Shown: one piece after another, positions 7,803-23,919 of the stretch
How the letters are laid out: every line of letters starts with the position of its first letter
Position numbering within the stretch: position 1 is the stretch's first letter
IMG/VR virus record: IMGVR_UViG_3300032116_014939
Span: 62,001-126,000 of that record
Length of the DNA: 64,000 bases
Direction: 5' to 3' (one strand)
Position numbers and translations under genes: made by a program
The notes under the pieces: generated by a model
Databases searched by the model: none
Told to the model about the DNA's origin: nothing
What the model saw: the letters and a program-made list of their open reading frames with translations, nothing else

Positions 7803-8221
7803 TAGTAATCTCCTCCTATAACTGTAGCTTGTATTCCCGCAACAACTGCTGTACCTATGGTACAATACATAATATATCCGGCAGGTAATGCAAAGTTTAA
7901 TGGTAATTCATAGTTTGTTGACGCACTAGTTTGAGACGCAGTATTTGCAGCAATTGTGATTTCATCCCAAATTGTGCTGTTATTGGGAGTTGCCAAAGCG
8001 CCTCCATTATTTATAAAAACCCTAGCCATTGTAGCGGCATTATTCGTGTTAGTGGACTGATGTCTAAATCTTATCTTTTGAACATAACTTCCGTTAGTAT
8101 TCGCACTAAAAACCATATATGAAGTTCCCGCAGACAAGTTACCTGTATTGGCAACCGTCATATTAGTCGTCCACATAATCTCAGGTGTTAGTGTAAAAAT
8201 TGGAGCTGTATTTGCTGGCAT
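7802..8221 (-). CDS. Hypothetical fibre-associated beta-rich protein (139 aa)
   Basis: Clean ORF directly downstream of the giant fibre gene; preceded by a TATTTAT motif. Confidence 0.6.
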   Translation of the reverse strand: MPANTAPIFTLTPEIMWTTNMTVANTGNLSAGTSYMVFSANTNGSYVQKIRFRHQSTNTNNAATMARVFINNGGALATPNNSTIWDEITIAANTASQTSASTNYELPLNFALPAGYIMYCTIGTAVVAGIQATVIGGDY

Positions 8222-8257
8222 ATTATTATATTAGTTTAATTTCTTTTATTATAAATA

Positions 8258-11200
8258 TTATATATAGTTAAAATTGTTTGCAGTTGTATAAACAAGTCCT
8301 AAAGTGAACGAACCACCCGCCGCTCCATCAACACCACTTGTTCCTGATGAACCTGAACCAGAACTTCCTGATGAACCACTTGAACCAGAACCTGATGTTC
8401 CTGATGAACCAGCAGTACCTGAAGAACCACTTGAACCAGAACCTGATGTCCCAGATGAACCCGCGGTACCTGAAGAACCACTTGAGCCAGAACCTGAAGT
8501 CCCCGATGAACCCGCAGTACCTGAAGAACCACTTGAACCAGAACCTGATGTTCCTGATGAACCAGCAGTACCTGAACTACCTGATGAACCCGAACTACCT
8601 GAAGTACCTGATGTTCCAGATGAACCGCTAGTACCACTACTTCCATTTGACCCTGAAGTTCCCGATGAACCTGAAGTACCTGATGACCCTGAAGTTCCCG
8701 ATGAACCACTAGTTCCTCTTGAACCCGTACTACCCGATGAACCAGAGCTTCCTGATGACCCACTTGAACCCGAACCAGATGTTCCTGAAGAACCTGAACC
8801 TGATGACCCACTTGAACCAGATGTTCCACTAATACCATCTAGACCACTTGTTCCTGAAGAACCTGAACCTGAACTTCCTGATGACCCAGCACTTCCTGAT
8901 GTTCCCGAAGAACCGCTAGTTCCTGATGAACCTGAACCAGAACTTCCCGATGACCCAGCGCTTCCTGATGTTCCTGAAGAACCACTTGTTCCACTACTTC
9001 CTGTGATACCCGACGAACCAGAACTACCTGATGAGCCAGCACTTCCTGATGTTCCTGAAGAACCACTTGTTCCACTTGAACCAGAACTACCCGATGACCC
9101 AGCGCTTCCTGAAGTTCCACTTGTACCGCTAGAACCTGAAGTTCCCGATGAACCACTGGTACCTCTTGACCCTGTACTTCCTGAAGAACCTGAACTTCCA
9201 CTTGAGCCTGATGAACCTGATGTTCCCGAAGAGCCGCTAGACCCACTTGAACCTGATGAACCTGACGAGCCACTCGAACCAGATGTTCCTGATGAACCGC
9301 TAGTCCCCGAAGAACCTGAACCTGAACTTCCTGATGACCCAGCACTTCCACTTGAGCCAGAGGTACCCGAAGAACCTGACGTTCCGCTACTACCTGTAAT
9401 ACCCGATGAACCAGAACTTCCTGATGAACCACTACTACCTGATGTTCCTGAACTACCACTAGTTCCACTACTTCCTGTAATACCTGAAGAACCTGAACTA
9501 CCACTACTTCCTGATGAACCACTAGTTCCACTACTTCCTGTAATACCTGAAGAACCACTACTTCCTGATGAACCACTAGTTCCTGATGAGCCAGACGTTC
9601 CCGAAGAACCAGTATTTCCACTAGAACCTGAAGAACCACTTGTACCCGATGAACCCGATGTTCCACTAGAACCCGATGAACCACTTGAACCAGTGCTACC
9701 TGAAGAACCGCTAGTTCCTGATGTACCTGATGAACCTGAAGTTCCTCTTGAACCTGTACTTCCTGAAGAACCAGAACTTCCGCTTGAACCTGATGACCCA
9801 CTTGAACCTGAAGTTCCTGATGAACCACTAGTTCCTGATGAGCCAGCACTTCCTGATGACCCTGAACTTCCTGAAGAACCTGAAGTCCCTGAACTACCAC
9901 TAGTTCCACTACTTCCTGTTAAGCCTGAAGACCCACTACTTCCTGAAGAACCACTTGTTCCTGATGAACCTGATGTACCAGAACTACCTGTATTACCTGA
10001 ACTCCCACTTGAACCTGAACTTCCTGAAGAGCCTGAAGTTCCAGAACTACCACTTGTACCCGAAGAACCTGTATTACCCGAACTTCCACTTGAACCAGCA
10101 CTACCTGATGAACCGCTAGTTCCAGAAGAACCTGATGTGCCAGAACTTCCAGTAATACCTGATGAACCTGAACTACCACTTGAACCTGAGCTCCCTGAAG
10201 TTCCAGAACTTCCACTAGTACCCGATGAACCTGTATTTCCACTTGAACCTGAACTACCCGCACTTCCACTTGAACCCGATGTTCCTGAACTTCCACTTGT
10301 TCCTGATGAACCTGTATTACCCGAACTTCCGCTACTTCCTGAAGAACCACTTGACCCTGAAGTACCCGAAGAACCAGATGTTCCTGAACTTCCACTTGAA
10401 CCAGAAGAACCGCTAGTCCCTGATGTACCTGAAGAACCACTTGTTCCTCTTGAGCCCGTACTACCTGATGACCCTGAGCTTCCACTTGAACCTGAGCTTC
10501 CTGAAGTTCCAGAAGAACCACTTGTTCCACTACTTCCAGTATTACCTGACGAACCTGACGACCCACTTGAGCCAGAAGAACCTGAAGTTCCAGAAGAACC
10601 ACTTGTTCCACTTGAGCCAGCACTTCCGCTAGACCCCGAACTACCTGAAGAGCCAGAAGAACCTGATGTTCCACTTGACCCAGAAGTTCCTGATGAACCA
10701 CTATTACCCGAAGAACCTGAGCTTCCACTTGAACCAGAAGAACCTGATGTTCCTGAAGAACCTCCAGTACCACTTGAGCCAGTACTTCCACTACTACCTG
10801 ATGAACCCGAACTTCCTGATGTACCTGAACTACCACTAGTCCCTGAAGAACCTGTATTTCCACTTGAACCCGAACTACCCGAAGAACCCGATGAACCTGT
10901 ACTACCTGAACTTCCACTTGAGCCTGAAGACCCTGATGTTCCACTACTACCCGATGTACCTGAGCTTCCACTAGACCCTGACGAACCACTTGAGCCAGAA
11001 GAACCTGATGTTCCAGAACTTCCACTAGTACCGGATGAGCCAGTGTTTCCGCTTGAACCTGAACTACCCGAGCTTCCTGAAGAACCACTTGTACCTACTG
11101 AACCTGAAGTACCAGCACTACCGCTAGAACCACTACTTCCACTTGAACCTGATGAACCTGAGCTTCCACTAGAACCAGAACTACCTGATGTACCAGAACT

Positions 11201-14200
11201 TCCGTTAGAACCTGATGTACCTGAACTTCCTGATGTTCCTGATGAACCACTAGTTCCTCTTGAACCCGTACTACCTGATGAACCTGAACTTCCAGTTGAC
11301 CCTGACGAACCACTTGAACCAGAACTACCAGATGTTCCTGACGAACCACTAGTACCCGATGAACCTGTATTTCCACTTGACCCTGAACTACCACTTGAAC
11401 CAGAAGAACCTGATGTACCAGAACTACCATTAGAACCTGAAGTTCCAGATGAACCTGATGAACCTGAACTACCGCTTGAGCCAGCACTTCCCGATGTTCC
11501 TGAACTACCGTTAGAACCTGATGTTCCACTTGAACCACTACTACCTGATGAACCTGTGCTACCACTTGAACCAGATGAACCACTTGTTCCAACACTTCCG
11601 CTAGACCCTGAACTACCCGAACTTCCTGATGAACCACTTGTACCTGATGACCCAGAAGTTCCTGACGAGCCAGATGAACCTGATGAACCAGCACTTCCCG
11701 AAGAGCCACTTGTCCCTACTGAACCCGATGTTCCGCTTGACCCTGTAATACCTGATGAACCCGAACTACCTGAAGACCCACTTGAACCTGATGTTCCTGA
11801 ACTTCCACTAACACCTGATGAGCCTGAACTTCCACTAGAACCTGATGACCCTGAAGTTCCTGTTGAGCCAGATGTTCCTGAACTACCACTAGAACCAGAT
11901 GACCCTGAGCTTCCTGATGACCCACTTGTTCCCACACTACCACTAGTTCCTGAAGAACCCGTACTACCACTTGAGCCAGAAGAACCTGAACTTCCTGAAG
12001 TACCTGTTGAGCCAGATGTTCCTGAACTACCACTCGTACCTCTTGAACCTGTACTACCTGAACTTCCGCTTGAACCTGATGAACCGCTACTACCTGATGA
12101 ACCACTTGTTCCAGAAGAACCTGATGTACCAGAACTTCCGCTTGAGCCAGATGAACCAGCACTACCACTTGAGCCAGATGTCCCTGATGAACCACTCGTT
12201 CCACTTGAGCCAGTATTACCTGACGAACCAGAACTACCCGAACTTCCGCTAGAACCACTTGTACCCGATGTTCCTGAAGAACCACTAACACCTGATGACC
12301 CCGAACTCCCACTACTTCCACTTGAGCCAGAGCTTCCTGATGTACCACTTGAACCTGATGTTCCTGAAGACCCTGTACTACCACTTGAACCAGAAGAACC
12401 TGAACTACCCGATGTTCCAGCACTACCACTACTACCACTTGAACCTGATGTTCCAGCAGACCCCGATGTACCAAAACCTGATGACCCCGAACTTCCTCCC
12501 GAACCTGAGCTTCCACTAGAACCTGAAGTTCCTGAACTACCGCTAGTACCTGAAGAACCTGATGTTCCACTAGAACCAGATGAACCACTACTACCTGAAG
12601 AGCCAGATGAACCAGCACTTCCAGATGTACCAGAAGACCCTGAACTACCGCTAGAGCCTGAGGTACCACTTGTACCTACTGAACCTGATGTACCAGAACT
12701 TCCAGATGTCCCTGAAGTACCTCTCGACCCTGTTGAGCCTGAACTACCTGAAGACCCTGAACTTCCAGATGAACCTGATGTTCCGCTACTACCTGAAGTA
12801 CCGGCAGAACCTGAACTTCCTGAACTACCATTAGAACCTGATGTTCCACTAGAACCTGCACTTCCCGAACTTCCACTTGAACCTGATGTTCCTGCAGAAC
12901 CCGATGCACCACCTGTTCTATAATAAGTTTTACCTGTATTATCTACAACAACAAATTTTGTTTGATTATCATCTTGAGTAATTTGAGCAATTGTTAATTC
13001 ATTTGTTGTTGTTGCCGATGCAGTTATTTGATTAACATTAAATAAATCATTCCCTCCTAATCCTAAATCACCTGTCATTTGTCTTCCACCATCAACTAAA
13101 AGATATTGTTGGTGGTCATCAGCAGTTAAACCTAACAAATTACCGTGTACCGATGTCGCGTTAACACCACTTGACTTAAAACCAATTACAGGTCTAATAT
13201 CCTCAATTTGAACAATACCTCCAAATCCTTGTTGGATATAAACAGACGCAATTGATACCACACCATCCGTAAAATAATCAGGAGGTAATGGTAATGGAGC
13301 CGCCTCAGCTTCAACAAGAGTCGCATATTCTTGTTGACCTAAAACTAAAAAGTATTCTTCATTAATACCTTCACCGACAACATATAATGTATGTTTAGTA
13401 TAATACGATGTGGTTAATGCTGATAATGAATTTTCATTTTTATTATATTGAAAATTATTTACAAACGTAGTTGCACTTCTTGTCCAATTTGTACCATTGT
13501 TCCAATATTGTGTAAAACTTATTGGTGTTCCACCTGTTGGTGTAAAATTATTTTCTGATAACCAATAACTACCAGATGTCACATCAAGAGTAAATGATGT
13601 TGAACCTGTTGTAACAATAGAACCTGTTGAATAAACTGGACCTAACGCTTGTCTGTTAAAGCTTGATAATAAATTTGCAGTATGTTGAGCGTTGTATGGC
13701 GCAGCATCAATCAATTCAATACCTGTCGCGTTTGTAACTACTCGACCCATAATAATATTATAGAATGGGTCAGGTAATCCTGAATTTGCAACTAACGTTC
13801 CGTTATTTGAAATATAAATGTAGTTATCAGTTTCAGCACTTAATGTTAACTGACCATCAACCCAATCATATCTTTTAATAATACTATTATCTGTTTGGTC
13901 AGCTAAATATCCAAATCCTGCAGATGTATTGATTGTTCTACCACTAACAATAGTAATTGTACCACCACTTAATAATCCCATTGGACTACCTTGAAAAATC
14001 AGTGTAGAAGCATCTGTATGTGTTCCATCTGCGAAAGTAACCGATAACTTTCTTGTTACGTCGTTCTCACCATCCGTATCATCCAAGAAGTTCCAATAAA
14101 AGTCCTCACTTGCTGTAATTATTTTTGAGTGGTCTGAAATACCCTGAAATCTACCTATTGTCGATGCGTTTTCAATTAAAAAGTCATTAGTAATTGAATC

Positions 14201-16168
14201 GTGAATCATGGTACCAACCATTCTAAAAGTAGGCCCACCACCTGTATTTGGTACGTAAACGGCAATATCCCATTCTTGAATATCCATACCTGTTCCTTCC
14301 AATACCGCAGAGTCTGATAACACAAATGCGGTTGAACCTGTTAGTAATGCACCTTCAAAAGTACACCCGTTGAACGATAAAAGTGTTCCAGAGCCAGTAC
14401 CGCTATTACCAATAACATCATCATATGTTGGGAACAAGAAATAGTTTTCCATATTACCCAACGCCTGAAACCCATTAGTTGCTTCAACTTTTAATCCGTA
14501 ACTAAACTCACCATTAACATCGACATATTCACCATAGAACTTGGTATCTTGTGTTGATGATTTTATCCATACACCAATATCTGAATCATATATTGAAATC
14601 TTATGAGCTTGTCCAAAATCACCGATATCATCACAGTGAATTGCCGCATATCCTGCACCAGCACCTGATAATGTTAAAAACGATACTTCGTTATTAATAC
14701 CTATATTAATAATATGTTGAGTAGAACCCGTTGGGACAATTTGTGTAGTTTGAATATTACTACCCTCAATACTCACATACGGTTTTCCAGTTAAATTAAT
14801 TTGTCCCTCAGAAAATAACCCAGGTCCAACTCTAACCAAAAAACGATTATTAATTGACGAACCTGTAATCCAATCAACTGCACTCTTAATAGATGTAAAG
14901 TCACCACCTTTTTTAGCGACCGTAATAACTCTTGGGTCTTGGTTAACTTCATATAACGGAGCGTCAATCGGTATTGTAGTTTTTAAGAATGTATCAGTAC
15001 CTTCAATTTTACCTGTTGCAGTTGGATGTTCAACTAATACGTCTTGAGTATTATTTTCAAAGTTAAGAGCCGAACCAAATATACTTGGAGCTGAGCCCGT
15101 GTTTGGAGCATATATCGCAGTTACCCATCGTTGGAAATTAACTGCCGTTAATCTTAACGAACCTCCGTTTTCAACCCAAAATCCTGTTCCTGCCGCAACC
15201 CCAACAGCCTTTGTTAATAAACATCCGTTAACAATAAACGTACAACCTGGTTGGTCTGCCTTTGCAAATATTAATCCTGATGTCGTACTAACACCTCCAT
15301 TAGTAGATGTAACGTTTCTAAGTTGCATCCTACCAATACCACTACCATCATTTGTAACATAGAAACCTATAGTAAATGGATATCCACCATACTTAACGTT
15401 AGAACACTGTATGATACAGTTTCCACCACCTGTTCCAACAACTTTTGCGTGAGTATAGTTTGTACCAAATCTTACGTTTTCAACATATGCAATTGCATTA
15501 GTTTGAGGAGTTGTCGATGATGAATAAACAATAGACGACGCACTTGTTCCTGATGAACCTTGAATTTGCATGTCCTGAACCATTGATTGGTCGGCCATGA
15601 TGAAAACACTATTATTAGGATTACTTGCTTGTAGGATAGTTGTTGTACTATCACCACCTCTAACCGTAATCCATGATTTCATTGTGATGGTATCTTCAAT
15701 ATATAAACCAGGATAAACTCTAACTTCCCAAGTACTATTTGGAGTTGCACCTGTTATACTATCTACCGCATCTTTAACGGAATTAAAGTCTGTTGAACTA
15801 CCACTTAATCCAACAGTTACATAATTTTCTATAATTGTATTAAAATTATAACTTAACGATGTCCAATTTGTACCATCACTAGTTATTTGAATTGAATCAT
15901 TCTGAATTAATGTAACCGTAGTACTCCCATCTATAGTTTCACTACCATTTGGGTCAACAGTTATTGTACCGGTACCATTATTTTTAATTACATATAATTT
16001 ACCCTGCACACCTACCGCAGTAGGTAAATTAATAGTAAAAGTACCACCAGAGACAGCGACCATATAGTCGTCATCAGTAATCGTATATGTACTACCAATT
16101 GTTACTTGTGGATATGTTATACCACCTAAGGATATTATACCCCTTCTCGCAACAAACTCATTTGCCAT
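8258..16168 (-). CDS. Giant fibre protein (2636 aa): N-terminal anchor, two pectin-lyase-like beta-helix regions, ~1,525-aa Gly-X-Ser/Thr repeat, very short C-terminus
   Basis: MANEFVARRG start and TFTINLPTAVG...IKNNG..TI.V...ETIDG fibre module. DFNSVKDAVD..VRVYPGLY.E and GDFTSIKSAVD..VRVGPGLF.E are typical beta-helix caps. Followed by (GSS/GTS)n. Confidence 0.75.
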   Translation of the reverse strand: MANEFVARRGIISLGGITYPQVTIGSTYTITDDDYMVAVSGGTFTINLPTAVGVQGKLYVIKNNGTGTITVDPNGSETIDGSTTVTLIQNDSIQITSDGTNWTSLSYNFNTIIENYVTVGLSGSSTDFNSVKDAVDSITGATPNSTWEVRVYPGLYIEDTITMKSWITVRGGDSTTTILQASNPNNSVFIMADQSMVQDMQIQGSSGTSASSIVYSSSTTPQTNAIAYVENVRFGTNYTHAKVVGTGGGNCIIQCSNVKYGGYPFTIGFYVTNDGSGIGRMQLRNVTSTNGGVSTTSGLIFAKADQPGCTFIVNGCLLTKAVGVAAGTGFWVENGGSLRLTAVNFQRWVTAIYAPNTGSAPSIFGSALNFENNTQDVLVEHPTATGKIEGTDTFLKTTIPIDAPLYEVNQDPRVITVAKKGGDFTSIKSAVDWITGSSINNRFLVRVGPGLFSEGQINLTGKPYVSIEGSNIQTTQIVPTGSTQHIINIGINNEVSFLTLSGAGAGYAAIHCDDIGDFGQAHKISIYDSDIGVWIKSSTQDTKFYGEYVDVNGEFSYGLKVEATNGFQALGNMENYFLFPTYDDVIGNSGTGSGTLLSFNGCTFEGALLTGSTAFVLSDSAVLEGTGMDIQEWDIAVYVPNTGGGPTFRMVGTMIHDSITNDFLIENASTIGRFQGISDHSKIITASEDFYWNFLDDTDGENDVTRKLSVTFADGTHTDASTLIFQGSPMGLLSGGTITIVSGRTINTSAGFGYLADQTDNSIIKRYDWVDGQLTLSAETDNYIYISNNGTLVANSGLPDPFYNIIMGRVVTNATGIELIDAAPYNAQHTANLLSSFNRQALGPVYSTGSIVTTGSTSFTLDVTSGSYWLSENNFTPTGGTPISFTQYWNNGTNWTRSATTFVNNFQYNKNENSLSALTTSYYTKHTLYVVGEGINEEYFLVLGQQEYATLVEAEAAPLPLPPDYFTDGVVSIASVYIQQGFGGIVQIEDIRPVIGFKSSGVNATSVHGNLLGLTADDHQQYLLVDGGRQMTGDLGLGGNDLFNVNQITASATTTNELTIAQITQDDNQTKFVVVDNTGKTYYRTGGASGSAGTSGSSGSSGSAGSSGTSGSNGSSGSSGSAGTSGSSGTSGSSGSSGSSGSSGSTGSRGTSGTSGSSGTSGSVGTSGTSGSSGSSGSSGTSGSAGSSGSSGSSGSSGSSGTSGSSGTSGSSGTSGSSGSSGSGGSSGSSGFGTSGSAGTSGSSGSSGSAGTSGSSGSSGSSGSTGSSGTSGSSGTSGSSGSSGSSGSSGSSGVSGSSGTSGTSGSSGSSGSSGSSGNTGSSGTSGSSGTSGSSGSAGSSGSSGSSGTSGSSGTSGSSGSSGSSGSSGSSGSTGSRGTSGSSGTSGSTGTSGSSGSSGSSGSTGSSGTSGSVGTSGSSGSSGSSGSSGSSGTSGSTGTSGSSGSSGSSGSSGVSGSSGTSGSSGSSGSSGSSGITGSSGTSGSVGTSGSSGSAGSSGSSGSSGTSGSSGTSGSSGSSGSSGSSGSVGTSGSSGSSGSTGSSGSSGSSGTSGSNGSSGTSGSAGSSGSSGSSGSSGTSGSNGSSGTSGSSGSSGSSGSSGNTGSSGTSGSSGTSGSSGSSGSSGSTGSSGSSGSTGSRGTSGSSGTSGSSGTSGSNGSSGTSGSSGSSGSSGSSGSSGSSGSSGSAGTSGSVGTSGSSGSSGSSGSSGNTGSSGTSGSSGTSGSSGSSGSSGSSGSSGTSGSSGTSGSSGSSGSSGSTGSSGSSGSSGSSGNTGSSGTSGSSGTSGSSGSSGSSGSTGSSGTGGSSGTSGSSGSSGSSGSSGNSGSSGTSGSSGTSGSSGSSGSSGSSGSAGSSGTSGSSGTSGSSGSSGSSGSSGNTGSSGTSGSSGTSGSSGSSGSSGSSGSTGSRGTSGSSGTSGTSGSSGSSGSSGTSGSSGTSGSSGSSGSSGSSGNTGSSGTSGSSGTSGSSGSAGSSGSSGNTGSSGTSGSSGTSGSSGSSGSSGSSGITGSSGTSGSSGTSGSSGSAGSSGSSGNTGSSGTSGSSGTSGSSGSSGSSGSSGNTGSSGTSGSSGTSGSSGSSGSSGLTGSSGTSGSSGTSGSSGSSGSSGSAGSSGTSGSSGTSGSSGSSGSSGSSGSSGSTGSRGTSGSSGTSGTSGSSGSTGSSGSSGSSGTSGSSGTSGSSGSSGNTGSSGTSGSSGTSGSSGSSGSSGITGSSGTSGSSGSSGSSGSSGITGSSGTSGSSGTSGSSGSSGSSGSSGITGSSGTSGSSGTSGSSGSAGSSGSSGSGSSGTSGSSGTSGSSGSSGSSGSSGSSGSSGTSGSSGSSGSSGSSGSTGSRGTSGSSGTSGSSGTSGTSGSAGSSGSSGSSGTSGSSGTSGSAGSSGSSGSSGITGSSGTSGSSGTSGSAGSSGSSGSGSSGTSGSSGTSGSAGSSGSSGSGSSGTSGLDGISGTSGSSGSSGSGSSGTSGSGSSGSSGSSGSSGSTGSRGTSGSSGTSGSSGTSGSSGTSGSNGSSGTSGSSGTSGTSGSSGSSGSSGTAGSSGTSGSGSSGSSGTAGSSGTSGSGSSGSSGTAGSSGTSGSGSSGSSGTAGSSGTSGSGSSGSSGSSGSGSSGTSGVDGAAGGSFTLGLVYTTANNFNYI
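8333..12910 (-). repeat. Coding 9-nt/3-aa periodic repeat (Gly-Ser-Ser, Gly-Thr-Ser...), about 500 triplets
   Basis: Directly visible; Gly at every third residue with degenerate synonymous codons. Confidence 0.95.
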
Positions 16169-16223
16169 TTATTCTTTCCTTTTTTCCCTATCCAAAAGAA
16201 AATTCTTCTATGTTTATTTGTTA

Positions 16224-16252
16224 ATAAATATACTTGAAAAGTATTCTGTCAA
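16224..16252 (-). promoter_or_regulatory. Putative promoter of the 2636-aa fibre gene: TTGACA-N16-TATTTAT
   Basis: Minus strand reads TTGACA (16252-16247), 16 nt, then TATTTAT (16230-16224), just downstream of a terminator. Confidence 0.45.
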
Positions 16253-16262
16253 TCCTAAAATG

Positions 16263-16296
16263 AAAAAACCATCACATTTATTATTATGTGATGGTT
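16263..16296 (-). terminator. Rho-independent terminator after 16319..22315
   Basis: Perfect 11-bp stem AACCATCACAT/ATGTGATGGTT (16267-16277/16286-16296), 8-nt loop, T-tract on the minus strand. Confidence 0.8.
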
Positions 16297-16318
16297 CATG
16301 TTTTTATATATTTTAATA

Positions 16319-19300
16319 TTAAATTGTAATTCTTGTTGATATACTAATGTTCCAACTACCTTTATTCACATCAGCCCAAAACTCAACATTACCACCTGAC
16401 ACCGTAACCCTTAACTCAATACCCAAAGTAGAGTCATTTAAGTCAGGAGTTGATATATCAACATAAGTAGCGTTAGATGTGTCCCAAATACTCATTACTT
16501 GGCCACCTCTTGTTGCAGTTGTGGTTGGATTATTAACCCAATAATCAAAAATTGCACTACGTCCTAATGATGTACTAAATGAACAAATACGTGTTGATGC
16601 GGTAATACTTGTACCACTACAAGAAGTTAAAGATTGTTTTCCATATTCAACAGTATCACCTGTAATACCTAAAGTTGTACCATCAAAAGTTAATTTACTT
16701 TGAGCAATCGCACTATTTGTAGAGGTACCTGAAGCAGTTAATATTCTGTAATCAGCAGGATTAGCAATTGTATTGAAACCTGTACCTGATGTACCAGCAC
16801 TACCGCTAGAACCCGAAGTTCCACTTGAGCCGGATGAACCTGAACTGCCAGAAGACCCTGATGTTCCTGAAGAACCACTTGTACCCGAACTTCCTGAGGT
16901 ACCACTTGAACCTGACGAACCACTTGACCCAGATGAGCCAGAACTTCCGCTAGAACCAGATGTACCCGAACTTCCTGAACTACCACTACTACCTGAAGAC
17001 CCTGATGTACCACTTGAACCAGAAGTTCCTGTAGAACCGCTAGACCCTGATGAACCTGATGTTCCTGAAGACCCACTACTTCCCGAAGTACCTGATGAAC
17101 CACTTGACCCACTTGACCCACTAGTACCAACCGACCCAGAAGAACCGCTTGTACCAACACTTCCTGAACTTCCACTACTACCTGATGAACCAGACGAACC
17201 TGAAGTTCCAGATGAACCACTAGTACCAACACTACCTGACGACCCAGAAGAACCCGAGCTCCCTGATGTCCCACTTGAGCCCGATATTCCTGAAGAACCG
17301 CTAGTACCTACACTACCGCTACTTCCACTTGAACCAGATGTTCCTGTAGAACCGCTAGACCCTGATGAACCACTACTACCCGATGAACCTGAAGAACCAC
17401 TTGTTCCTGATGTACCCGCACTTCCTGAAGAACCGCTACTACCTGAAGAACCAGAAGAACCACTAGTACCAGATGTACCTACGCTACCACTACTACCAGA
17501 AGAACCACTACTACCGCTAGACCCTGAACTACCTGATGTTCCACTTGAGCCAGATGTTCCAACACTTCCACTAGACCCTGAACTACCCGATGAGCCAGAA
17601 GACCCTGATGTTCCGGAACTTCCTGAAGAACCGCTACTACCACTAGTACCAGAACTTCCCGTAGAACCAGATGTTCCGCTACTACCTGATGAACCAGAAG
17701 TTCCAACACTACCACTAGAACCAGAACTTCCTGAACTCCCACTACTACCTGATGTTCCGCTTGACCCAGATGTTCCAACTGAACCTGATGAGCCAGAGCT
17801 TCCTGAACTGCCACTTGAACCAGAAGAACCTGATGTTCCACTACTTCCCGATGAACCACTACTACCGCTAGTTCCTACACTACCTGAAGAACCTGAACTT
17901 CCGCTTGTTCCCGAAGAACCAGTTAGACCTGAAGAGCCTGAACTTCCACTACTACCACTAGAACCACTTGTTCCTGAAGAGCCACTTGTACCTACACTAC
18001 CGCTACTTCCACTTGAACCAGAAGAACCTGATGTACCAGTTGACCCAGATGTTCCTGTACTACCCGAAGAACCGCTACTTCCACTTGAACCTGATGACCC
18101 TGAAGTTCCTGATGAACCAGTTAATCCCGAAGAGCCTGAACTTCCACTAGACCCACTTGAGCCAGAAGTTCCAACACTACCGCTACTTCCACTTGAGCCA
18201 GAAGTACCTACACTACCACTTGAACCAGAACTTCCTGAAGTACCTGTTGACCCAGATGACCCTGAAGTTCCTGATGAACCACTTGTACCAGCACTTCCCG
18301 AAGTTCCAACCGAACCCGATGAACCACTAGAGCCCGAAGAACCACTACTACCTGATGTGCCACTTGAACCTGAAGAACCTGTTGACCCTGAACTTCCACT
18401 ACTACCACTTGTTCCAGAAGAGCCAGTTAAACCTGAAGACCCAGAACTTCCACTACTACCCGAAGAACCTGAAGTTCCTACCGAACCACTACTACCTGAT
18501 GTTCCAGTACTCCCCGAACTTCCACTTGAGCCTGCACTACCTGATGAACCTGATGTTCCACTAGAACCCGATGAACCACTTGACCCAGTGCTACCTGAAG
18601 TACCACTAGACCCACTTGAGCCAGAAGTCCCAACACTACCGCTACTTCCAGATGAACCTGAACTTCCACTTGAACCAGAACTTCCTGAAGTACCTGTTGA
18701 CCCAGATGTTCCAGAACTTCCTGTAGAACCCGATGAACCTGAACTACCCGATGAGCCACTTGTACCAGCACTTCCTGAAGTCCCAACCGAACCCGATGAA
18801 CCACTTGAACCTGAAGAACCTGATGTTCCAACACTACCAGATGAACCAGAACTTCCTGAAGTACCAACAGAACCACTACTACCTGAGCTTCCACTTGTTC
18901 CCGAAGAACCAGTTAGACCTGAAGAGCCTGAACTTCCGCTACTTCCTGATGTTCCAGAACTTCCTGTAGAACCCGATGAACCTGAACTACCTGATGAACC
19001 ACTTGTACCAGAAGTTCCAACACTTCCACTTGAACCAGATGAACCGCTAGAACCTGATGTTCCTGAAGACCCTGTTAAACCCGAAGAACCACTTGACCCT
19101 GAAGTACCAACACTACCTGATGTACCTGAAGAACCAGAACTACCACTAGAACCTGAACTTCCTGATGAACCAGAAGAACCACTACTACCACTAGTTCCTA
19201 CACTACCAGATGAACCACTTGTACCACTAGAACCTGTACTTCCACTTGAGCCAGAACTTCCACTAGTACCTGTTGAGCCAGAACTTCCACTTGAACCAGA

Positions 19301-22300
19301 AGAACCCGATGTACCAACACTACCTGAACTACCACTAGAACCTGAACTTCCTGATGAACCACTAGAACCTGAAGTTCCAGATGTACCAGAAGAACCTGTT
19401 ATTCCAGAACTTCCACTTGAACCTGACGAGCCTGAAGACCCTGATGTACCGACACTACCACTAGAACCAGACGTTCCACTTGAACCTGTACTTCCGGATG
19501 AACCTGAACTACCTGAGGTACCCACAGAACCTGATGTTCCTGAACTACCTGAACTACCTGATGTACCCGCAGAACCTGAAGAACCACTTGTCCCCGATGT
19601 ACCTGAGCTACCACTATTACCTGAAGTTCCGCTAGTACCATTAGTACCGTCAACACCACTCAAACCTGAAGAACCCGATGTTCCAACACTACCTGAACTA
19701 CCACTACTACCACTTGACCCCGCACTTCCTGAAGAGCCACTTGTACCAGCAGTTCCTGAAGTACCAACAGAACCAGAACTACCACTTGAACCCGAAGAAC
19801 CTGATGTTCCAACACTACCAGAACTTCCTGAAGAGCCTGTACTTCCACTTGAACCTGATGTTCCTGCAGAACCAGAACTTCCTGAAGAGCCTGTGCTTCC
19901 ACTTGAACCTGATGTTCCTGAACTACCTGTTATACCACTTGAACCTGAACTTCCTGAGGAACCAGAAGAACCTGATGTTCCCGAAGAGCCAGTTAGTCCT
20001 GAACTTCCACTACTACCACTAGACCCTGTACTTCCTGAAGAACCTGAACTACCAGAAGTTCCAGATGTACCAGTACTACCTGATGTCCCTGAAGAACCAT
20101 TAACACCAGAACTTCCTGATGAACCTGTACTTCCACTACTTCCTGATGTCCCACTTGAACCTGAAGTTCCACTTGAACCTGAAGTTCCAGCAGAGCCAGA
20201 GCTACCACTTGAACCTGAGCTACCAGCACTTCCGCTTGAACCTGATGTTCCTGAGCTACCGCTTATTCCACTTGAGCCTGATGAACCAGCACTGCCACTT
20301 GAGCCTGATGAACCTGATGTTCCTGTACTACCTGATGACCCCGTACTTCCACTTGAACCAGAACTTCCAGATGTTCCAGATGAACCTGTTAAACCTGAAC
20401 TACCCGATGAACCCGAAGAACCTGTGCTACCTGACGTTCCTGAACTACCACTAGTGCCTGAAGAACCTGTGCTACCTGACGTTCCGCTAGTACCTGAACT
20501 TCCAGTTAATCCACTACTTCCAGAACTTCCACTTGAACCTGATATTCCTGAACTTCCTGATGAACCCGTACTTCCACTTGAACCTGACGAACCAGCACTA
20601 CCTGATGTACCAGAAGAACCTGTTAACCCACTTGAACCTGATGACCCTGATGAGCCTGAAGAACCCGAAGAACCCGAAGAACCCGAAGAACCCGATGTAC
20701 CACTTGAACCTGTACTTCCTGAAGAACCACTTGAGCCCGAACTTCCTGATGTACCTGAACTACCAGTAATACCACTTGACCCACTAGAACCTGAAGAGCC
20801 TGATGTACCACTAGAGCCTGAAGACCCTGATGTTCCTGAAGTTCCAACACTTCCCGAAGAACCACTTGAACCTGAAGAACCAGATGTTCCTGAAGTTCCA
20901 ACACTTCCCGAAGAACCACTTGAGCCCGATGAGCCACTTGAGCCTGAACTACCTGATGAGCCAGACGTACCTGAAGTTCCAGATGAACCTGAGCTACCTG
21001 AAGAACCACTTGTTCCTGATGAACCTGAGGTACCACTTGAACCTGAGGTTCCAGCACTACCACTACTTCCTGATGTTCCTGAACTACCACTTGTACCAGA
21101 ACTTCCTGATTCACCTGATGAACCAGAACTTCCTGAAGAACCATCCGCTCCATTATGAATCCAAGAAAATGTATATGTGCTACCACTTGTTAAATTACCA
21201 TTACAAGTAAAAGGTATGTCTAAAGTAATATCCCAATAAGGTCCATTATTAACTATAGTTAAAATTTTGTAAATACCTAATATAGGAAAATTACCAACTT
21301 CTTCAATCTGTAAATAAACTTCTTGACTTAAATTGATAGAATCTTGAATTGCGGTTAACCAATTATCATAATTAATATTATAAACATCATTATCTGCAAT
21401 AGATATATAATTTACTGAACATAACTCATTAATGTTTGTTGCAAAAAACCCTTGGTTAGGGTCATTTGGGGTAACTATAGATGATGTCCATAACCATCTA
21501 CCGCTATTAGCACCGTCATTACCACTATATCCACTTGAGCCAGATGTACCAGATGTCCCACTAGCACCATCAACACCGTTTATACCACTTGTTCCAGCAC
21601 TACCACTTGAGCCAGAGCTACCCGATGTACCCGAACTTCCTGAAGAACCGGCGGAACCTGAACTCCCTGACGTACCGCTAGTACCATCACCACCTGAAAC
21701 GGTAATACCTGTAACACTTACAACGGTACCATCACTATTATATAATTCTAAAGTGCTTGTACCTGAAAAGAACGTACCACCAGTTAATTCTGTTCCTTGA
21801 GCAAAAACTCTCCATCTCGCATCATTTCTTGATGTTCCACTAACACCTTCAATTGTTGAACCTGTCCAAGCGTTAATAAATGCCTGTCCTTCAGGTGTAT
21901 TATTTTTTACAATTGTCTCATAAGATAATTGAGTAACAGAATTAGCACTTACCGCAGCGTCCCATAAATCGTTATAGTTGTCTATTTGAAATTGGTATGC
22001 CGTTTCAGTTTCATTAACCCAAACAATCATACCTAACCTTCTTCTACCTGATGAAAAATTATCAGAGTTAAGGGTTAAATAAGTCGGCATAAATGTACCA
22101 TTACCAATTGTGATATTAATTGGGATAGTATTTGCACTAAGTTGTTGTTGTCCCTTCCCACTAAATGACAACCCTAAATTAGTAAGGTAAGCGGCTTCTT
22201 GCCAACCCCCAACATTTAAGACGTTAAAGTTGGTTCCGTATGGACTTGTTCTTGCTACACTGAAAGGTCCTGTTATTTGGGACGCACTTATTGGATTTTG

Positions 22301-22315
22301 ATACGGTATTGCCAT
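16319..22315 (-). CDS. Giant fibre protein (1998 aa): SSGRRRLGM N-terminal domain, ~1,450-aa Gly-X-Ser/Thr repeat, C-terminal globular domain
   Basis: N-terminus is paralogous to 31651..35763. After the repeat, GTGFNTIANPADYRILTASG...AQSKLTFDG is shared with 31651..35763. Confidence 0.75.
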   Translation of the reverse strand: MAIPYQNPISASQITGPFSVARTSPYGTNFNVLNVGGWQEAAYLTNLGLSFSGKGQQQLSANTIPINITIGNGTFMPTYLTLNSDNFSSGRRRLGMIVWVNETETAYQFQIDNYNDLWDAAVSANSVTQLSYETIVKNNTPEGQAFINAWTGSTIEGVSGTSRNDARWRVFAQGTELTGGTFFSGTSTLELYNSDGTVVSVTGITVSGGDGTSGTSGSSGSAGSSGSSGTSGSSGSSGSAGTSGINGVDGASGTSGTSGSSGYSGNDGANSGRWLWTSSIVTPNDPNQGFFATNINELCSVNYISIADNDVYNINYDNWLTAIQDSINLSQEVYLQIEEVGNFPILGIYKILTIVNNGPYWDITLDIPFTCNGNLTSGSTYTFSWIHNGADGSSGSSGSSGESGSSGTSGSSGTSGSSGSAGTSGSSGTSGSSGTSGSSGSSGSSGTSGTSGSSGSSGSSGSSGSSGSSGSVGTSGTSGSSGSSGSSGSVGTSGTSGSSGSSGTSGSSGSSGSSGITGSSGTSGSSGSSGSSGSTGSSGTSGSSGSSGSSGSSGSSGSSGSSGLTGSSGTSGSAGSSGSSGSTGSSGSSGISGSSGSSGSSGLTGSSGTSGTSGSTGSSGTSGSSGTSGSTGSSGSSGSSGLTGSSGTSGSSGSSGSTGSSGSTGTSGSSGSSGSAGSSGSSGISGSSGTSGSSGSAGSSGSSGSSGSAGTSGSSGTSGSSGTSGSSGSTGSSGSSGVNGSSGTSGSTGTSGTSGSSGSSGSTGSSGSSGSSGLTGSSGTSGSSGSSGSSGSSGITGSSGTSGSSGSTGSSGSSGSAGTSGSSGSTGSSGSSGSVGTSGSSGSSGSSGSVGTSGTAGTSGSSGSAGSSGSSGSSGSVGTSGSSGLSGVDGTNGTSGTSGNSGSSGTSGTSGSSGSAGTSGSSGSSGTSGSVGTSGSSGSSGSTGSSGTSGSSGSVGTSGSSGSSGSSGSSGITGSSGTSGTSGSSGSSGSSGSSGSSGSVGTSGSSGSSGSSGSTGTSGSSGSSGSTGSSGTSGSSGSVGTSGSSGSSGSSGSSGSSGSSGSSGTSGSVGTSGSSGSSGLTGSSGTSGSSGSSGSSGSVGTSGTSGSSGSSGSSGSTGSSGTSGSSGSSGSSGLTGSSGTSGSSGSSGSVGTSGSSGSSGSVGTSGSSGSSGSSGSVGTSGSAGTSGSSGSSGSSGSTGSSGTSGSTGTSGSSGSSGSSGSSGSSGSVGTSGSSGSSGTSGSTGSSGSSGSSGTSGSSGSAGSSGSSGSTGTSGSSGSVGTSGSSGSSGSSGSSGLTGSSGTSGSSGSSGSTGSSGSSGTSGSSGSSGSSGSSGSVGTSGSAGTSGSSGTSGSSGSTGTSGSSGSSGSVGTSGSSGSSGSVGTSGSSGSSGSSGSSGLTGSSGTSGSSGSSGSSGSSGSTGTSGSTGTSGSSGSSGSSGSVGTSGSSGTSGSSGSSGSSGSSGLTGSSGTSGSSGSSGSVGTSGSSGSSGSSGTSGSSGSSGSSGSSGSSGSVGTSGSSGTSGSSGSSGSSGSSGSVGTSGSSGSSGTSGSTGSSGTSGSSGSSGSSGTSGSSGSSGSSGSSGSVGTSGSSGTSGSSGSSGSSGSSGSSGSVGTSGTSGSSGSSGSSGSSGSAGTSGTSGSSGSSGSSGSSGSSGSTGTSGSSGSSGSVGTSGSSGISGSSGTSGSSGSSGSSGSVGTSGSSGTSGSSGSSGSSGSSGSVGTSGSSGSVGTSGSSGSSGSSGTSGSSGSSGTSGSSGSSGSTGTSGSSGTSGSSGSSGSSGSSGTSGSSGSSGSSGSSGSSGSSGTSGSSGTSGSSGTSGSSGSSGSSGSSGTSGSSGSAGTSGTGFNTIANPADYRILTASGTSTNSAIAQSKLTFDGTTLGITGDTVEYGKQSLTSCSGTSITASTRICSFSTSLGRSAIFDYWVNNPTTTATRGGQVMSIWDTSNATYVDISTPDLNDSTLGIELRVTVSGGNVEFWADVNKGSWNISISTRITI
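16784..21142 (-). repeat. Coding Gly-X-Ser/Thr triplet repeat (about 480 triplets; GSS, GTS, GSV, GST, GLT)
   Basis: Directly visible. A shorter tract lies at about 21530-21690. Confidence 0.95.
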
Positions 22316-22343
22316 TTTGTTACTTACTAATAATTATCTTTTT

Positions 22344-23549: not shown

Positions 23550-23550
23550 A

Positions 23551-23919
23551 TTAGATAGATACGTAACTATTACCAATTTTTATCGTTAGTTTTTCTCTGA
23601 TTGGTAAAATGTAAGTTCCTGTATCAGTAATAAAAACAAACTCCCCTTCATAAAGACCTTCTCTACTTGTATCACTTGAAGTGAATTTATAATAAACATA
23701 ATATTCTGTCTCAGCGTTTGGGTCAACAAATGTCTTCTCAACAAACCCTCCTTTCTTATTCAGAATCTTATATGCTCCCGTTTTAACATCTATCATGGAA
23801 AAGTAAATCAACGAGTTTTCGATTATTGACATGAACTCTGTTATGTCAGCAATACCATCTTTAACCACTTGCATTTTAAGAACAGGTAGTGTTGCACCTT
23901 TGTTAATAAAAAATTCCAT
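23551..23919 (-). CDS. BppU-like (baseplate upper/adaptor) small protein
   Basis: FFINKGATLPVLKMQV...YKFTSSDT..EG.YEGEF....G..ILP pattern of BppU N-terminal-type domains. Confidence 0.5.
   Translation of the reverse strand: MEFFINKGATLPVLKMQVVKDGIADITEFMSIIENSLIYFSMIDVKTGAYKILNKKGGFVEKTFVDPNAETEYYVYYKFTSSDTSREGLYEGEFVFITDTGTYILPIREKLTIKIGNSYVSI

What the first reader, a model, noticed from the sequence alone, without database searches (positions are those of the whole stretch)
8333..21142. Two giant proline-free (Gly-X-Ser/Thr)n tracts of about 1,500 residues each
Gly occupies every third position for about 500 triplets, but X/Y are almost only Ser/Thr (rare Ala, Val, Asn, Ile, Leu, Arg), with no Pro and almost no charge. 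That is unlike typical phage or bacterial collagens. As a triple helix (~0.29 nm per residue) each tract would be more than 400 nm long, longer than a typical tail. Alternatives are a polyproline-II bundle or a disordered brush. Glycosylated Thr is known to stabilise a vent-worm cuticle collagen, which ties to the adjacent GTs (inference). The two tracts differ in composition: GNT and GSR occur in the first, while GSV is abundant and GLT more frequent in the second.
Basis: partly seen in the sequence, partly recalled or inferred. Interest (0 to 1): 0.72.

Follow-up and report, generated by a model that had tools for sequence, protein, structure and literature searches.

The report
Giant proline-free collagen-like phage fibres
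Two neighbouring genes of an uncultivated 242-kb freshwater phage encode fibre proteins whose ordinary short collagen-like stalk has grown to about 500 Gly-Ser/Thr-Ser triplets with no proline, which as a triple helix would be about 0.4 micrometre long; dozens of other uncultivated phages carry similar tracts and none has been studied.

Summary
Two minus-strand genes, A (8258-16168, 2636 aa) and B (16319-22315, 1998 aa), carry 501 and 507 Gly-X-Y triplets. There is no Pro, 9 and 3 charged residues, and over 90% Ser/Thr at X and Y.

The tracts are not an assembly artefact:
- The longest exact DNA repeat is 51 bp.
- Three separate metagenome assemblies match both tracts exactly.

Gly is kept at every third residue while codons are scrambled. 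This argues for a Gly-dependent helix, most simply a trimeric collagen-type triple helix, and against a disordered brush.

The flanking domains are phage fibre modules:
- B has a widely shared N-terminal anchor.
- B's C-terminal domain is predicted to trimerise.
- A has a double beta-helix like depolymerases and tailspikes.
- Paralogue C has the same modules with only a 41-triplet tract.

The tracts are not unique. Sixty-one other viral loci share the motif that follows the tract, with Pro-free tracts of 27 to 2391 residues.

The link to glycosylation is plausible but unproven. A glycosyltransferase island, including a GT60-type enzyme, sits inside the fibre module. GT60 occurs in 5 of 17 related viral records, against 4 of 50,697 GenBank phage records.

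Verdict: a new variant of a known kind (phage collagen-like fibres). Interest is moderately high.

The parts
8258..16168 (-). Gene A, 2636 aa (239 kDa): N110 domain, double beta-helix, beta-rich domain, pre-tract motif, giant tract, 16-aa tail
   Evidence: ORF and translation. The start MANEFV.RRG is conserved in L009 and L021.
15839..16168 (-). A N110 domain (aa 1-110)
   Evidence: 57-71% identical at the start of the gene that follows a B-like gene in L009/L015, L014, L021 and L024, and inside a tract ORF in L028. 54% identical to aa 465-560 of paralogue C. Weak Phage_depo_C match.
14069..15826 (-). A aa 115-700: two tandem right-handed parallel beta-helices (depolymerase/tailspike-like)
   Evidence: AlphaFold2 model with mean pLDDT 82. 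Foldseek hits to PL6 alginate lyases, GH55 glucanases, pectin methylesterases and phage tailspikes, E 1e-5 to 1e-3.
13199..14068 (-). A aa 701-990: beta-rich domain of the conserved N-terminal module
   Evidence: Part of a family with 838 representative clusters at E<=1e-30. pLDDT about 90.
12908..12955 (-). Pre-tract motif FVVVDNTGKTYYRTGG (A aa 1072-1087)
   Evidence: Also found before tracts in C (32890-32937) and in six viral loci.
8309..12910 (-). A tract, aa 1087-2620: 501 Gly-X-Y triplets with a loose 9-triplet supra-repeat
8261..8308 (-). A C-terminal tail FTLGLVYTTANNFNYI (16 aa)
   Evidence: A true stop is followed by AT-rich spacer, and no junction motif occurs in any frame downstream. 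No other tract-bearing ORF in the related loci ends this way.
16266..16297 (-). Terminator-like hairpin between B and A
   Evidence: 12-bp stem followed by a T run. This is a consensus match only.
16319..22315 (-). Gene B, 1998 aa (172 kDa): N-anchor, short tract, small domain, giant tract, junction, C-terminal beta-sandwich
21695..22315 (-). B N-anchor (aa 1-207)
   Evidence: 41% identical to the N-terminus of C. The same anchor, searched with C's copy, is up to 93% identical in over 200 metagenomic phage proteins with unrelated distal parts. 44% identical in L014.
21506..21694 (-). B short tract (aa 208-270, 21 triplets)
   Evidence: Pfam Collagen 29.5 bits.
21152..21505 (-). B middle globular domain (aa 271-388)
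   Evidence: 33-35% identical in L024 and L054.
16778..21151 (-). B long tract, aa 389-1846: 486 uninterrupted Gly-X-Y triplets
   Evidence: Exact contig pieces found in three runs.
16322..16786 (-). B post-tract junction motif (GTGFNT...LTFDG, starting at aa 1844) plus C-terminal beta-sandwich (to aa 1998)
   Evidence: The junction is shared by 65 viral loci. 53% identical to L009. Predicted homotrimer: ipSAE 0.86 against best control 0.02; the mark was reached by 21 of 30 solved pairs and 0 of 23 single chains. AF2 pLDDT 79, with weak fold matches to T4 gp9 and the Kp9 fibre.
22344..23576 (-). 410-aa protein with a Pro/Thr/Ser mucin-like linker, between B and the GT island
   Evidence: Translation.
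23949..25619 (-). Glycosyltransferase, 556 aa: HtrL_YibB domain plus a weak TAGT-like C-terminal half
   Evidence: PF09612 2.7e-13; TAGT 0.0027; phrog_842 2e-5.
25616..26179 (-). GT2-like protein, 187 aa
   Evidence: PF00535 8.8e-5, just below the cut-off. PglI-like 2.7e-5.
26172..27035 (-). 287-aa protein, probably an HtrL/YibB-like glycosyltransferase
   Evidence: ESM Atlas feature hits of 0.97 or more; 59 of the 100 hits are to HtrL_YibB clusters (best at rank 5, score 0.97). Structure neighbours are HtrL family. This is a lead only.
27010..27720 (-). 236-aa protein of unknown function inside the GT island
   Evidence: No family hit. Overlaps its neighbours.
27724..28968 (-). GT60-type glycosyltransferase, 414 aa (Pfam GlcNAc PF11397)
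   Evidence: PF11397 2.7e-68, 231 bits against a cut-off of 21. phrog_24687 7.6e-171. 70% identical homologue 4 kb from the tract gene in L028.
31651..35763 (-). Gene C, 1370 aa: short-tract paralogue with N-anchor, 15-triplet tract, N110-like domain, middle domain, pre-tract motif, 41-triplet GSS/GTS tract, junction motif and distal domain
   Evidence: Translation and module identities. Pfam Collagen 1.3e-19.

Best explanation
A and B are structural fibre proteins of an uncultivated freshwater jumbo myovirus (242 kb, 32% GC). They are built from the same exchangeable modules as the phage's ordinary fibre protein C. In A and B, the Pro-free Gly-Ser/Thr-Ser stalk has expanded about 12-fold, from 41 triplets to about 490-500.

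**Proposed mechanism.**
1. Three chains are brought into register by flanking trimeric elements. In B this is the post-tract junction plus C-terminal beta-sandwich. In A it is the N-terminal tailspike-like module and the pre-tract motif.
2. The Gly-X-Y tract then zips into a collagen-type triple helix. This gives thin, flexible filaments of roughly 0.4 micrometre.
3. B is anchored to the virion by its conserved N-terminal domain and presents its C-terminal knob at the far end.
4. A carries a double beta-helix module that probably binds or degrades polysaccharide.
5. The hydroxyl-covered surface is probably O-glycosylated by the glycosyltransferase island embedded in the fibre module, with the GT60-type enzyme as the candidate for the first sugar on Ser/Thr. 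This would hydrate, stiffen and protect a helix that lacks proline and salt bridges.
6. The likely role is long-range capture of host cells or their slime layer before the baseplate engages.

**Shown:** sequence, reality of the tracts, selection on Gly periodicity, module homologies, predicted trimerisation of the B C-terminus, and the GT neighbourhood.

**Inferred:** triple helix, place in the virion, glycosylation, and role in adsorption.
For: **Gly periodicity under selection.**
- Gly is at every third residue for 486 uninterrupted triplets in B and 350 in A.
- Gly codons are mixed in genome-wide proportions, and GSS is spelled by 42-49 different 9-mers.
- So the periodicity is held by selection, not by recent copying.
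- The same rule holds in 61 other viral loci whose X/Y residues differ (GTS, GTD, GIN, GSN). Ala at the Gly position is about 1% overall.

**Collagen family and trimerisation.**
- Pfam Collagen scores are 630-658 bits.
- B 1760-1998 is predicted to trimerise with ipSAE 0.86 against a best control of 0.02. The mark was reached by 21 of 30 solved pairs and 0 of 23 single chains.

**Fibre context.**
- The genes lie in one tightly packed co-directional array downstream of gp25-like and gp6-like baseplate wedge genes.
- The N-anchor shared by B and C is up to 93% identical in over 200 phage proteins with swapped distal parts.
- A aa 115-700 folds as a tandem beta-helix like tailspikes and PL6/GH55 enzymes.
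- PHROG hits are to tail fibre families.
- Paralogue C has the same pre- and post-tract motifs around a 41-triplet tract.

**Length looks maintained.** The B orthologue in L014 is 44-48% identical in its flanking domains and has a 1446-residue tract, against 1521 here.

**Glycosylation.**
- The five overlapping or abutting genes of the GT island sit between fibre genes.
- PF11397 scores 231 bits.
- GT60 enzymes make GlcNAc-alpha-O-Thr on mucin-like proteins (PMC9472816).
- PF11397 is in 5 of 17 tract-bearing viral records, against 4 of 50,697 GenBank phage records.
- The genome has four epimerase/dehydratase genes.
- No ThyA-like hydroxymethylase was found that would point to DNA glycosylation.
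Against: **Against a triple helix.**
- There is no proline, and Ser/Thr have only middling triple-helix propensity in host-guest peptides (general knowledge, not tested here).
- The trimer prediction gave no confident contacts inside the Gly-X-Y part.
- Two relatives (L021, L004) carry Ala at 16-19% of Gly positions.

**Against the fibre model for A.** A has no domain after its tract, only 16 residues. Its free end is unexplained.

**Against the glycosylation link.**
- GT60 is absent from three near-complete tract-bearing records.
- One GT has weak similarity to DNA-base glucosyltransferases.

**Missing data.** There are no data on expression, on presence in virions, or on the host.
Confidence: 0.55

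Rival explanations
1. The tracts are intrinsically disordered, mucin-like (probably glycosylated) tethers or a brush. They are not a triple helix. Their reach would be tens of nm, not hundreds.
For: - There is no Pro and almost no charge.
- The trimer prediction gave no confident inter-chain contacts in the tract.
- Ala occupies 16-19% of Gly positions in L021 and L004.
- Pro/Thr/Ser mucin-like linkers occur in neighbouring proteins.
Against: - A disordered linker has no need for Gly at exactly every third residue. Here 486 of 486 positions keep it despite scrambled codons.
- Not one single-residue indel occurs in B.
- The same rule holds across 61 other divergent loci.
- Conserved motifs sit at both tract borders.
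Confidence: 0.2
2. The tracts adopt another Gly-dependent fold. One example is folded-back polyproline-II/polyglycine-II bundles, as in snow-flea antifreeze protein or the phage S16 adhesin. This would give a much shorter, thicker rod.
For: - The three-residue Gly repeat also fits PPII helices.
- A has a loose 27-residue supra-repeat that could be a stacking unit.
Against: - B has no regular supra-repeat: special triplets are spaced 1-26 triplets apart, mostly 3-6.
- No periodic turn-forming segments or register breaks occur in 1458 residues.
- The flanking domains are trimeric-fibre modules.
Confidence: 0.07
3. The tract lengths are assembly artefacts, that is, expansions or chimeric joins of low-complexity reads.
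For: - No long read or single Logan contig spans a tract.
- One IMG/VR contig and several related contigs break inside tracts.
- Thousands of contigs that are 90-95% alike exist in the same metagenomes.
Against: - The longest exact repeat is 51 bp, and 98% of 31-mers are unique.
- Three assemblies from different samples agree base for base over 23 kb.
- Exact pieces have the same depth as the unique flanks.
- 83-94% of sampled 31-mers are present in nine runs.
- Relatives have tracts of similar or greater length.
Confidence: 0.03
4. A and B are real collagen-like proteins but not virion fibres. For example, they could be deposited on the infected cell or released as decoys or matrix. The GT island could serve another target such as DNA or host glycans.
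For: - There are no expression or proteome data.
- One GT has weak similarity to DNA-base glucosyltransferases.
- A terminator-like hairpin separates B from A.
Against: - The genes lie inside the baseplate and fibre gene array.
- The N-anchor is shared with many phage fibre-like proteins.
- A has a tailspike-like fold.
- No hydroxymethylase was found for base modification.
Confidence: 0.1

Closest known systems
Collagen-like tail fibre / side-tail proteins of phages and prophages (e.g. E. coli O157 EPclA, PMC3368898; PHROG 'collagen like minor tail' families)
   Same: - Trimeric modular fibre proteins in which a Gly-X-Y stalk joins globular N- and C-terminal domains.
- They lie in the tail gene module.
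- They match Pfam Collagen.
   Different: - Known examples have stalks of tens to roughly a hundred residues, rich in Pro (48% at X in EPclPs) and charged residues (PMC3368898, Table 4).
- Here the tracts are 1458-1534 residues with no Pro and under 1% charge.
BclA and other Bcl exosporium glycoproteins of Bacillus (hair-like nap)
   Same: - The collagen-like region is rich in Thr, is O-glycosylated, and is held by a trimeric C-terminal domain.
- The region varies greatly in length, 27 to 1158 residues (PMC8968730).
- It forms surface filaments.
   Different: - The Bcl repeats are mostly GPT (contain Pro).
- The BclA C-terminal domain is C1q/TNF-like (general knowledge). B's C-terminal domain instead matches phage fibre domains such as T4 gp9, and only weakly.
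- Bcl proteins are cellular, not viral.
Glycosylated Thr-rich cuticle collagen of the vent worm Riftia
   Same: The idea that sugar on Thr can replace hydroxyproline in stabilising a triple helix (general knowledge, not tested here).
   Different: - It is an animal extracellular collagen that contains Pro.
- The sugar is galactose on Thr at the Y position. Here Y is 83% Ser, and Thr sits mostly at X.
Glycosylated fibrils of giant viruses (Mimivirus and relatives; PMC9614988)
   Same: - A virus-encoded glycosyltransferase cluster decorates long surface fibrils that mediate adhesion to the host.
- Collagen-like viral proteins with their own modifying enzymes exist in these viruses.
   Different: - Those are eukaryotic viruses.
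- The fibril protein reported there (R135, a GMC-type oxidoreductase) is not collagen-like.
- Their collagen-like proteins are modified on hydroxylysine.
GT60 polypeptide alpha-GlcNAc transferases (T. cruzi TcOGNT1; PMC9472816)
   Same: - The gene at 27724-28968 matches the family profile PF11397 at 231 bits.
- Known members start O-glycans on Thr of Ser/Thr-rich mucin-like proteins.
   Different: - The characterised members are eukaryotic.
- No phage member has a known substrate.
- No solved-structure relative was found by sequence.

Membership tests
Collagen triple-helix repeat proteins (Pfam PF01391) | Gly at every third residue over a long uninterrupted stretch | tested here: met
   486 uninterrupted triplets in B; 350 in the longest run of A.
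Collagen triple-helix repeat proteins (Pfam PF01391) | Profile match above the curated cut-off | tested here: met
   658 and 630 bits against a cut-off of 27.2.
Collagen triple-helix repeat proteins (Pfam PF01391) | Stabilising residues at X/Y (Pro/Hyp, or charged pairs as in bacterial collagens) | tested here: not met
   0 Pro. 9 and 3 charged residues in 1534 and 1458 residues.
Collagen triple-helix repeat proteins (Pfam PF01391) | Adjacent trimerisation domain that sets the chain register | tested here: inconclusive
   For B, the prediction supports a trimeric C-terminal domain: ipSAE 0.86 against control 0.02; the mark was reached by 21 of 30 solved pairs and 0 of 23 single chains. This is a prediction only. 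For A, the tailspike-like fold suggests a trimer but this was not tested.
Collagen triple-helix repeat proteins (Pfam PF01391) | Actual triple-helix formation (CD, melting, protease resistance) | not testable with these tools
   Needs recombinant protein. The trimer prediction gave no confident contacts in the tract.
Phage tail fibre / tailspike proteins | Gene lies in the tail/baseplate module; conserved N-terminal anchor with variable distal parts | tested here: met
   Co-directional array downstream of gp25- and gp6-like genes. The N-anchor is shared by over 200 proteins with different distal domains.
Phage tail fibre / tailspike proteins | Right-handed parallel beta-helix enzyme or binding domain (tailspike type) | tested here: met
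   A aa 115-700, in an AF2 model with mean pLDDT 82. Foldseek hits to tailspikes, PL6, GH55 and PME. Catalytic residues were not examined.
Phage tail fibre / tailspike proteins | Presence in the virion | not testable with these tools
   The phage is uncultivated and no proteome exists.
BclA-like exosporium collagen glycoproteins | GPT-type repeats and a C1q/TNF-like C-terminal domain | tested here: not met
   No Pro. The best fold matches of the C-terminal domain are T4 gp9 and phage fibre domains, not C1q.
BclA-like exosporium collagen glycoproteins | O-glycosylation of the collagen-like region | not testable with these tools
   Only genomic association with GTs is available.
Mucin-like PTS domains | Pro/Thr/Ser-rich sequence without fixed periodicity | tested here: not met
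   No Pro, and strict three-residue Gly periodicity.
CAZy GT60 / Pfam PF11397 (gene 27724-28968) | Profile match above the cut-off | tested here: met
   231 bits against a cut-off of 21, E 2.7e-68.
CAZy GT60 / Pfam PF11397 (gene 27724-28968) | Transfer of GlcNAc to Ser/Thr (or Hyp) of a polypeptide | not testable with these tools
   Needs an enzyme assay. The substrate is inferred only from gene neighbourhood and co-occurrence.

The most novel reading that the evidence does not exclude
A widespread, undescribed class of phage fibres is built on Pro-free (Gly-Ser/Thr-Ser)n triple helices that stay folded only because phage-encoded enzymes coat them with O-linked sugar. The GT60-type enzyme would start the glycan. 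Tract length would be tuned from about 10 nm to about 0.7 micrometre to match the host's surface layer. In this phage, B and A may also join end to end, since the gene order B then A recurs in four other loci. That would give a tether approaching 1 micrometre, far longer than typical phage tail fibres. It would also be the first mucin-type protein O-glycosylation system assigned to a bacteriophage structural protein.
Probability: 0.3. Interest if true: 0.85.

Novelty: new variant of a known kind. Interest (0 to 1): 0.62.

Why it matters
- **Collagen biophysics.** If these tracts fold as triple helices, they would show that neither proline nor charge pairs are needed for a collagen helix hundreds of nm long. 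They would also give a natural test of whether O-glycans on Ser/Thr can do the stabilising. That matters for understanding the triple helix and for designing recombinant collagens.
- **Phage biology.** The tracts point to a large, unannotated family of adjustable-length fibres in freshwater and huge phages, with tracts of 27 to 2391 residues around one conserved junction motif. They also suggest a possible role for phage-encoded protein glycosylation.
- **Annotation.** The junction motif and the N-anchor give handles for labelling thousands of 'hypothetical' giant phage proteins.

Tried and rejected
- **B C-terminal domain against the 5.8-billion-protein index:** no hit. Relatives appeared only through DNA-pattern scans of viral contigs.
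- **Megablast of 23.7 kb of the window against GenBank phages:** no match.
- **Cultured phages:** none carries the junction motif. Only two entries of the same 735-kb uncultured record match B's C-terminal domain.
- **Bacterial genomes:** a scan of 185,579 species gave two MAG contigs only, so there is no host clue from prophages.
- **XacN1, the best-annotated phage with a GT60 homologue:** no collagen-like neighbour.
- **Sequence search of solved structures** for the B N-anchor, A N110 and the GT60 protein: nothing usable.
- **ESM Atlas for the B N-anchor:** uninformative.
- **Read laying:** it could not give a spanning record. Logan contigs are 200-750 nt in the tract, and the only raw-read run was sampled at 3% (40 reads). 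The many 'joints' have sides under 30 nt and come from other repeat-bearing sequences, so I ignored them.
- **Promoter-like sites:** not above the shuffle expectation.
- **Plus-strand ORFs through the tracts** (8304-12923, 16773-21158): rejected as mirror images. They encode P/E/L/D-rich low-complexity sequence, whereas the minus-strand ORFs run into globular domains that have homologues.
- **Literature:** searches for Pro-free or Ser/Thr collagen-like phage fibres found no description. The library lacks most subscription journals.

Full report
**1. What is in the sequence**

The window is bases 62001-126000 of a single 242,064-bp viral contig with 31.9% GC. CheckV estimates it at 82% complete.

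Two minus-strand ORFs fill 8258-22315:
- A runs 8258-16168 (2636 aa, 239 kDa).
- B runs 16319-22315 (1998 aa, 172 kDa).

Triplet structure:
- A has 501 Gly-X-Y triplets at aa 1087-2620 (window 8309-12910). They form ten runs, the longest of 350 triplets. Most of the register slips between runs are of the 'GSG|SS' type.
- B has 486 uninterrupted triplets at aa 389-1846 (16778-21151).
- B also has 21 triplets at aa 208-270.

Composition:
- GSS is 57% and GTS 24% of triplets.
- There is no Pro in either tract.
- Charged residues number 9 in A and 3 in B.
GNT and GSR occur only in A. GSV and GLT occur mainly in B.

Both tracts match Pfam Collagen at 630-658 bits.

The long plus-strand ORFs through the tracts are mirror images encoding P/E/L/D-rich sequence. 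The minus-strand frames continue into globular domains that have homologues.

**2. The tracts are real**

- At DNA level the repeat is degenerate. Codon use for Gly, Ser and Thr equals that of other genes in the window.
- GSS is spelled by 42-49 different 9-mers.
- The longest exact repeat in 14 kb is 51 bp, and 98% of 31-mers are unique.
- Three IMG/VR contigs assembled from different metagenomes are identical to window 2911-26168 with no mismatch or gap. A fourth stops inside the B tract.
- Nine runs hold 87-94% of sampled 31-mers for window 12500-22400 (the A N-terminal half and all of B) and 68-83% for 8100-13100 (the A tract). Runs from at least five other studies hold large shares.
- Exact pieces of 200-750 nt tile the B tract in three runs at the depth of the unique flanks. 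In X1 this is 68-86 against 71-80.
- No read or contig spans a whole tract. The length therefore rests on concordant short-read assemblies.

**3. Anatomy of the proteins**

Protein A:
- It starts with a 110-aa domain.
- Two tandem right-handed beta-helices follow at aa 115-700. The AlphaFold2 model has mean pLDDT 82. Foldseek matches PL6 alginate lyases, GH55 glucanases, pectin methylesterases and phage tailspikes.
- Next come a beta-rich domain, the motif DDHQQYLL, and the pre-tract motif FVVVDNTGKTYYRTGG.
- Then come the tract and only 16 further residues.
- The N-terminal module is a large metagenomic family, with 838 representative clusters at E<=1e-30. Among the 150 best, only nine have any Gly-X-Y run, of at most 153 residues in total.
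- Homologues in huge-phage records carry either a short conventional collagen stretch followed by a C-terminal domain (LR756502) or no Gly-X-Y run (LR745206).

Protein B:
- It has an N-terminal anchor, a short tract, a small domain and the giant tract.
- A junction motif (GTGFNT...LTFDG) follows, then a beta-sandwich.
- That C-terminal part is predicted to form a homotrimer, with ipSAE 0.86 against a best control of 0.02. The mark was reached by 21 of 30 solved pairs and 0 of 23 single chains.
- Confident contacts lie only in aa 1847-1998.
- Its fold weakly resembles T4 gp9 and other phage fibre domains.

Protein C (31651-35763) is a paralogue with the same parts:
- Its N-anchor is 41% identical to B's.
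- It has a domain 54% identical to A's N110.
- It has the pre-tract motif, a 41-triplet GSS/GTS tract, the junction motif and a distal domain.

C shows the ordinary size of this stalk. A and B are about 12-fold expansions of it.

**4. Genomic context**

- From the gp25-like and gp6-like baseplate wedge genes (52146-54474) down to 404, all genes are co-directional and tightly packed.
- A block of five overlapping or abutting genes at 23949-28968 sits between the fibre genes:
  - an HtrL/YibB-type GT with a weak TAGT-like half;
  - a GT2-like protein;
  - a probable second HtrL-like protein;
  - an unknown protein;
  - a GT60-type enzyme (PF11397, 231 bits).
- Outside the window, the genome has four epimerase/dehydratase genes.
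- It also has tRNA-Ser(UGA) and tRNA-Thr(UGU), which match the commonest tract codons.
- No ThyA-like hydroxymethylase was found. No Tet/JBP match was found either, but that search rang in no control genome, so it does not show absence.

**5. Relatives**

- A related viral contig (L009/L015) has the same gene pair. Its B-like protein has an 870-residue (GTS/GTD)n tract and a C-terminal domain 53% identical to B's. Its A-like protein shares N110 and has a tract that runs off the contig.
- Scanning IMG/VR with the C-terminal alignment gave 65 loci sharing the junction motif; four are this phage's own contigs. Their Pro-free tracts range from 27 to 2391 residues. Examples are L025 (one run of 1923), L024 (1569), L014 (1446) and L026 (1395).
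- The B orthologue in L014 is only 44-48% identical in its flanking domains but has nearly the same tract length.
- A crAss-like contig and the 735-kb huge-phage record LR756501 also carry such tracts.
- A word search found about a hundred metagenomic proteins with Pro-free GTS/GSS tracts of 200-670 residues, often with a Peptidase_S74 C-terminus.
- No cultured phage in GenBank has the junction motif. Bacterial genomes essentially lack it.
- The N-anchor is up to 93% identical in over 200 phage proteins with unrelated distal parts. This is the usual signature of a virion-attachment domain.

**6. Interpretation**

*The fold.* The only feature invariant across all these lineages is Gly at every third residue, kept while codons and X/Y residues drift. 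Ala at the Gly position is about 1% overall and 0 in the window. A disordered linker would not be so constrained. A folded-back PPII bundle would need periodic turns, which B lacks. With trimeric modules at the tract borders, a collagen-type homotrimeric helix is the simplest reading. That gives 417 nm for B and 439 nm for A.

*Points against.*
- The tracts have no proline.
- The trimer prediction gave no confident contacts in the tract.
- Two relatives have Ala at 16-19% of Gly positions.
- A has an unexplained free end.

*Glycosylation.* This rests on three observations, and it is an inference:
- The GT island lies inside the fibre module.
- Characterised GT60 enzymes act on Thr of mucin-like proteins (PMC9472816).
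- PF11397 is in 5 of 17 tract-bearing viral records, three of them within 20 kb of the tract gene, against 4 of 50,697 GenBank phage records.

Three near-complete tract-bearing records lack GT60.

**7. Comparison and novelty**

- Collagen-like stalks in phage fibres are known. Typical viral ones have 22% Pro at X and 35-38% charged residues (PMC3368898).
- Bacillus Bcl proteins have Thr-rich glycosylated collagen-like regions of up to 1158 residues (PMC8968730).
- Giant viruses glycosylate their fibrils with their own enzymes (PMC9614988).
- What is new here is the combination of no proline, almost only Ser/Thr, lengths of 1500 residues and more, a conserved junction motif, and a recurrent GT60 partner.
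- All of these occur in uncultivated phages. I found no description in the searchable literature.
- I rate it a new variant of a known kind, with interest 0.62.

Noticed in passing
window 16266-16297 (-): A terminator-like hairpin (12-bp stem plus T run) lies in the 150-nt gap between B and A. The two giant genes may be expressed at different levels.
   Followed up: no
window 22344-23576 and 23551-23919 (-): The 410-aa protein has a Pro/Thr/Ser mucin-like linker, which is another possible O-glycosylation substrate. Its N-terminus is a paralogue of the adjacent 122-aa ORF. Both match the same place in L025.
   Followed up: partly
window 4910-7607 (-): Three tandem paralogues of about 295 aa lie downstream of A. 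Two match the Gly_rich_2 domain (PF21722) above its cut-off and the third just below it; two have PHROG hits to minor tail or tail fibre assembly proteins. They could be fibre accessories.
   Followed up: no
window 2602-4632 and 36805-38985 (-): Two proteins carry SprB repeats (PF13573), which are typical of Bacteroidota gliding adhesins. This hints at a Bacteroidota host, as does the crAss-like relative L003.
   Followed up: no
window 8261-8308 (-): A ends in a 16-aa hydrophobic/aromatic tail (FTLGLVYTTANNFNYI) straight after its tract. No other tract-bearing ORF in 65 related loci ends like this.
   Followed up: partly
L021 4692-9875 and L004: Relatives with 'GTS-ATS-GTS' repeats have Ala at 16-19% of the Gly positions. 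This is unusual for a collagen helix.
   Followed up: partly
L082 4291-9285 (LR756501, 735-kb huge phage record): An unannotated 1665-aa protein has three Pro-free GTS/GSS tracts and a C-terminal domain 38.5% identical to B's.
   Followed up: partly
genome G000:C1 775-3956, 9952-10662 and 170630-176457 (outside the window): A cluster of 14 tRNAs includes Ser(UGA) and Thr(UGU) but no Gly. Four NAD-dependent epimerase/dehydratase genes suggest phage-encoded nucleotide-sugar synthesis.
   Followed up: partly
window 16400-22300 laid on runs X1, X10, X11: Thousands of short contigs 90-95% alike pile up on the tract. These lake metagenomes therefore hold a very large diversity of GSS/GTS-coding sequences from other genomes.
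   Followed up: no
window 23949-25619 (-): The C-terminal half of the 556-aa GT weakly resembles DNA-base glucosyltransferases (TAGT, T4 beta-glucosyl-HMC alpha-glucosyltransferase). Part of the GT island might act on DNA.
   Followed up: partly
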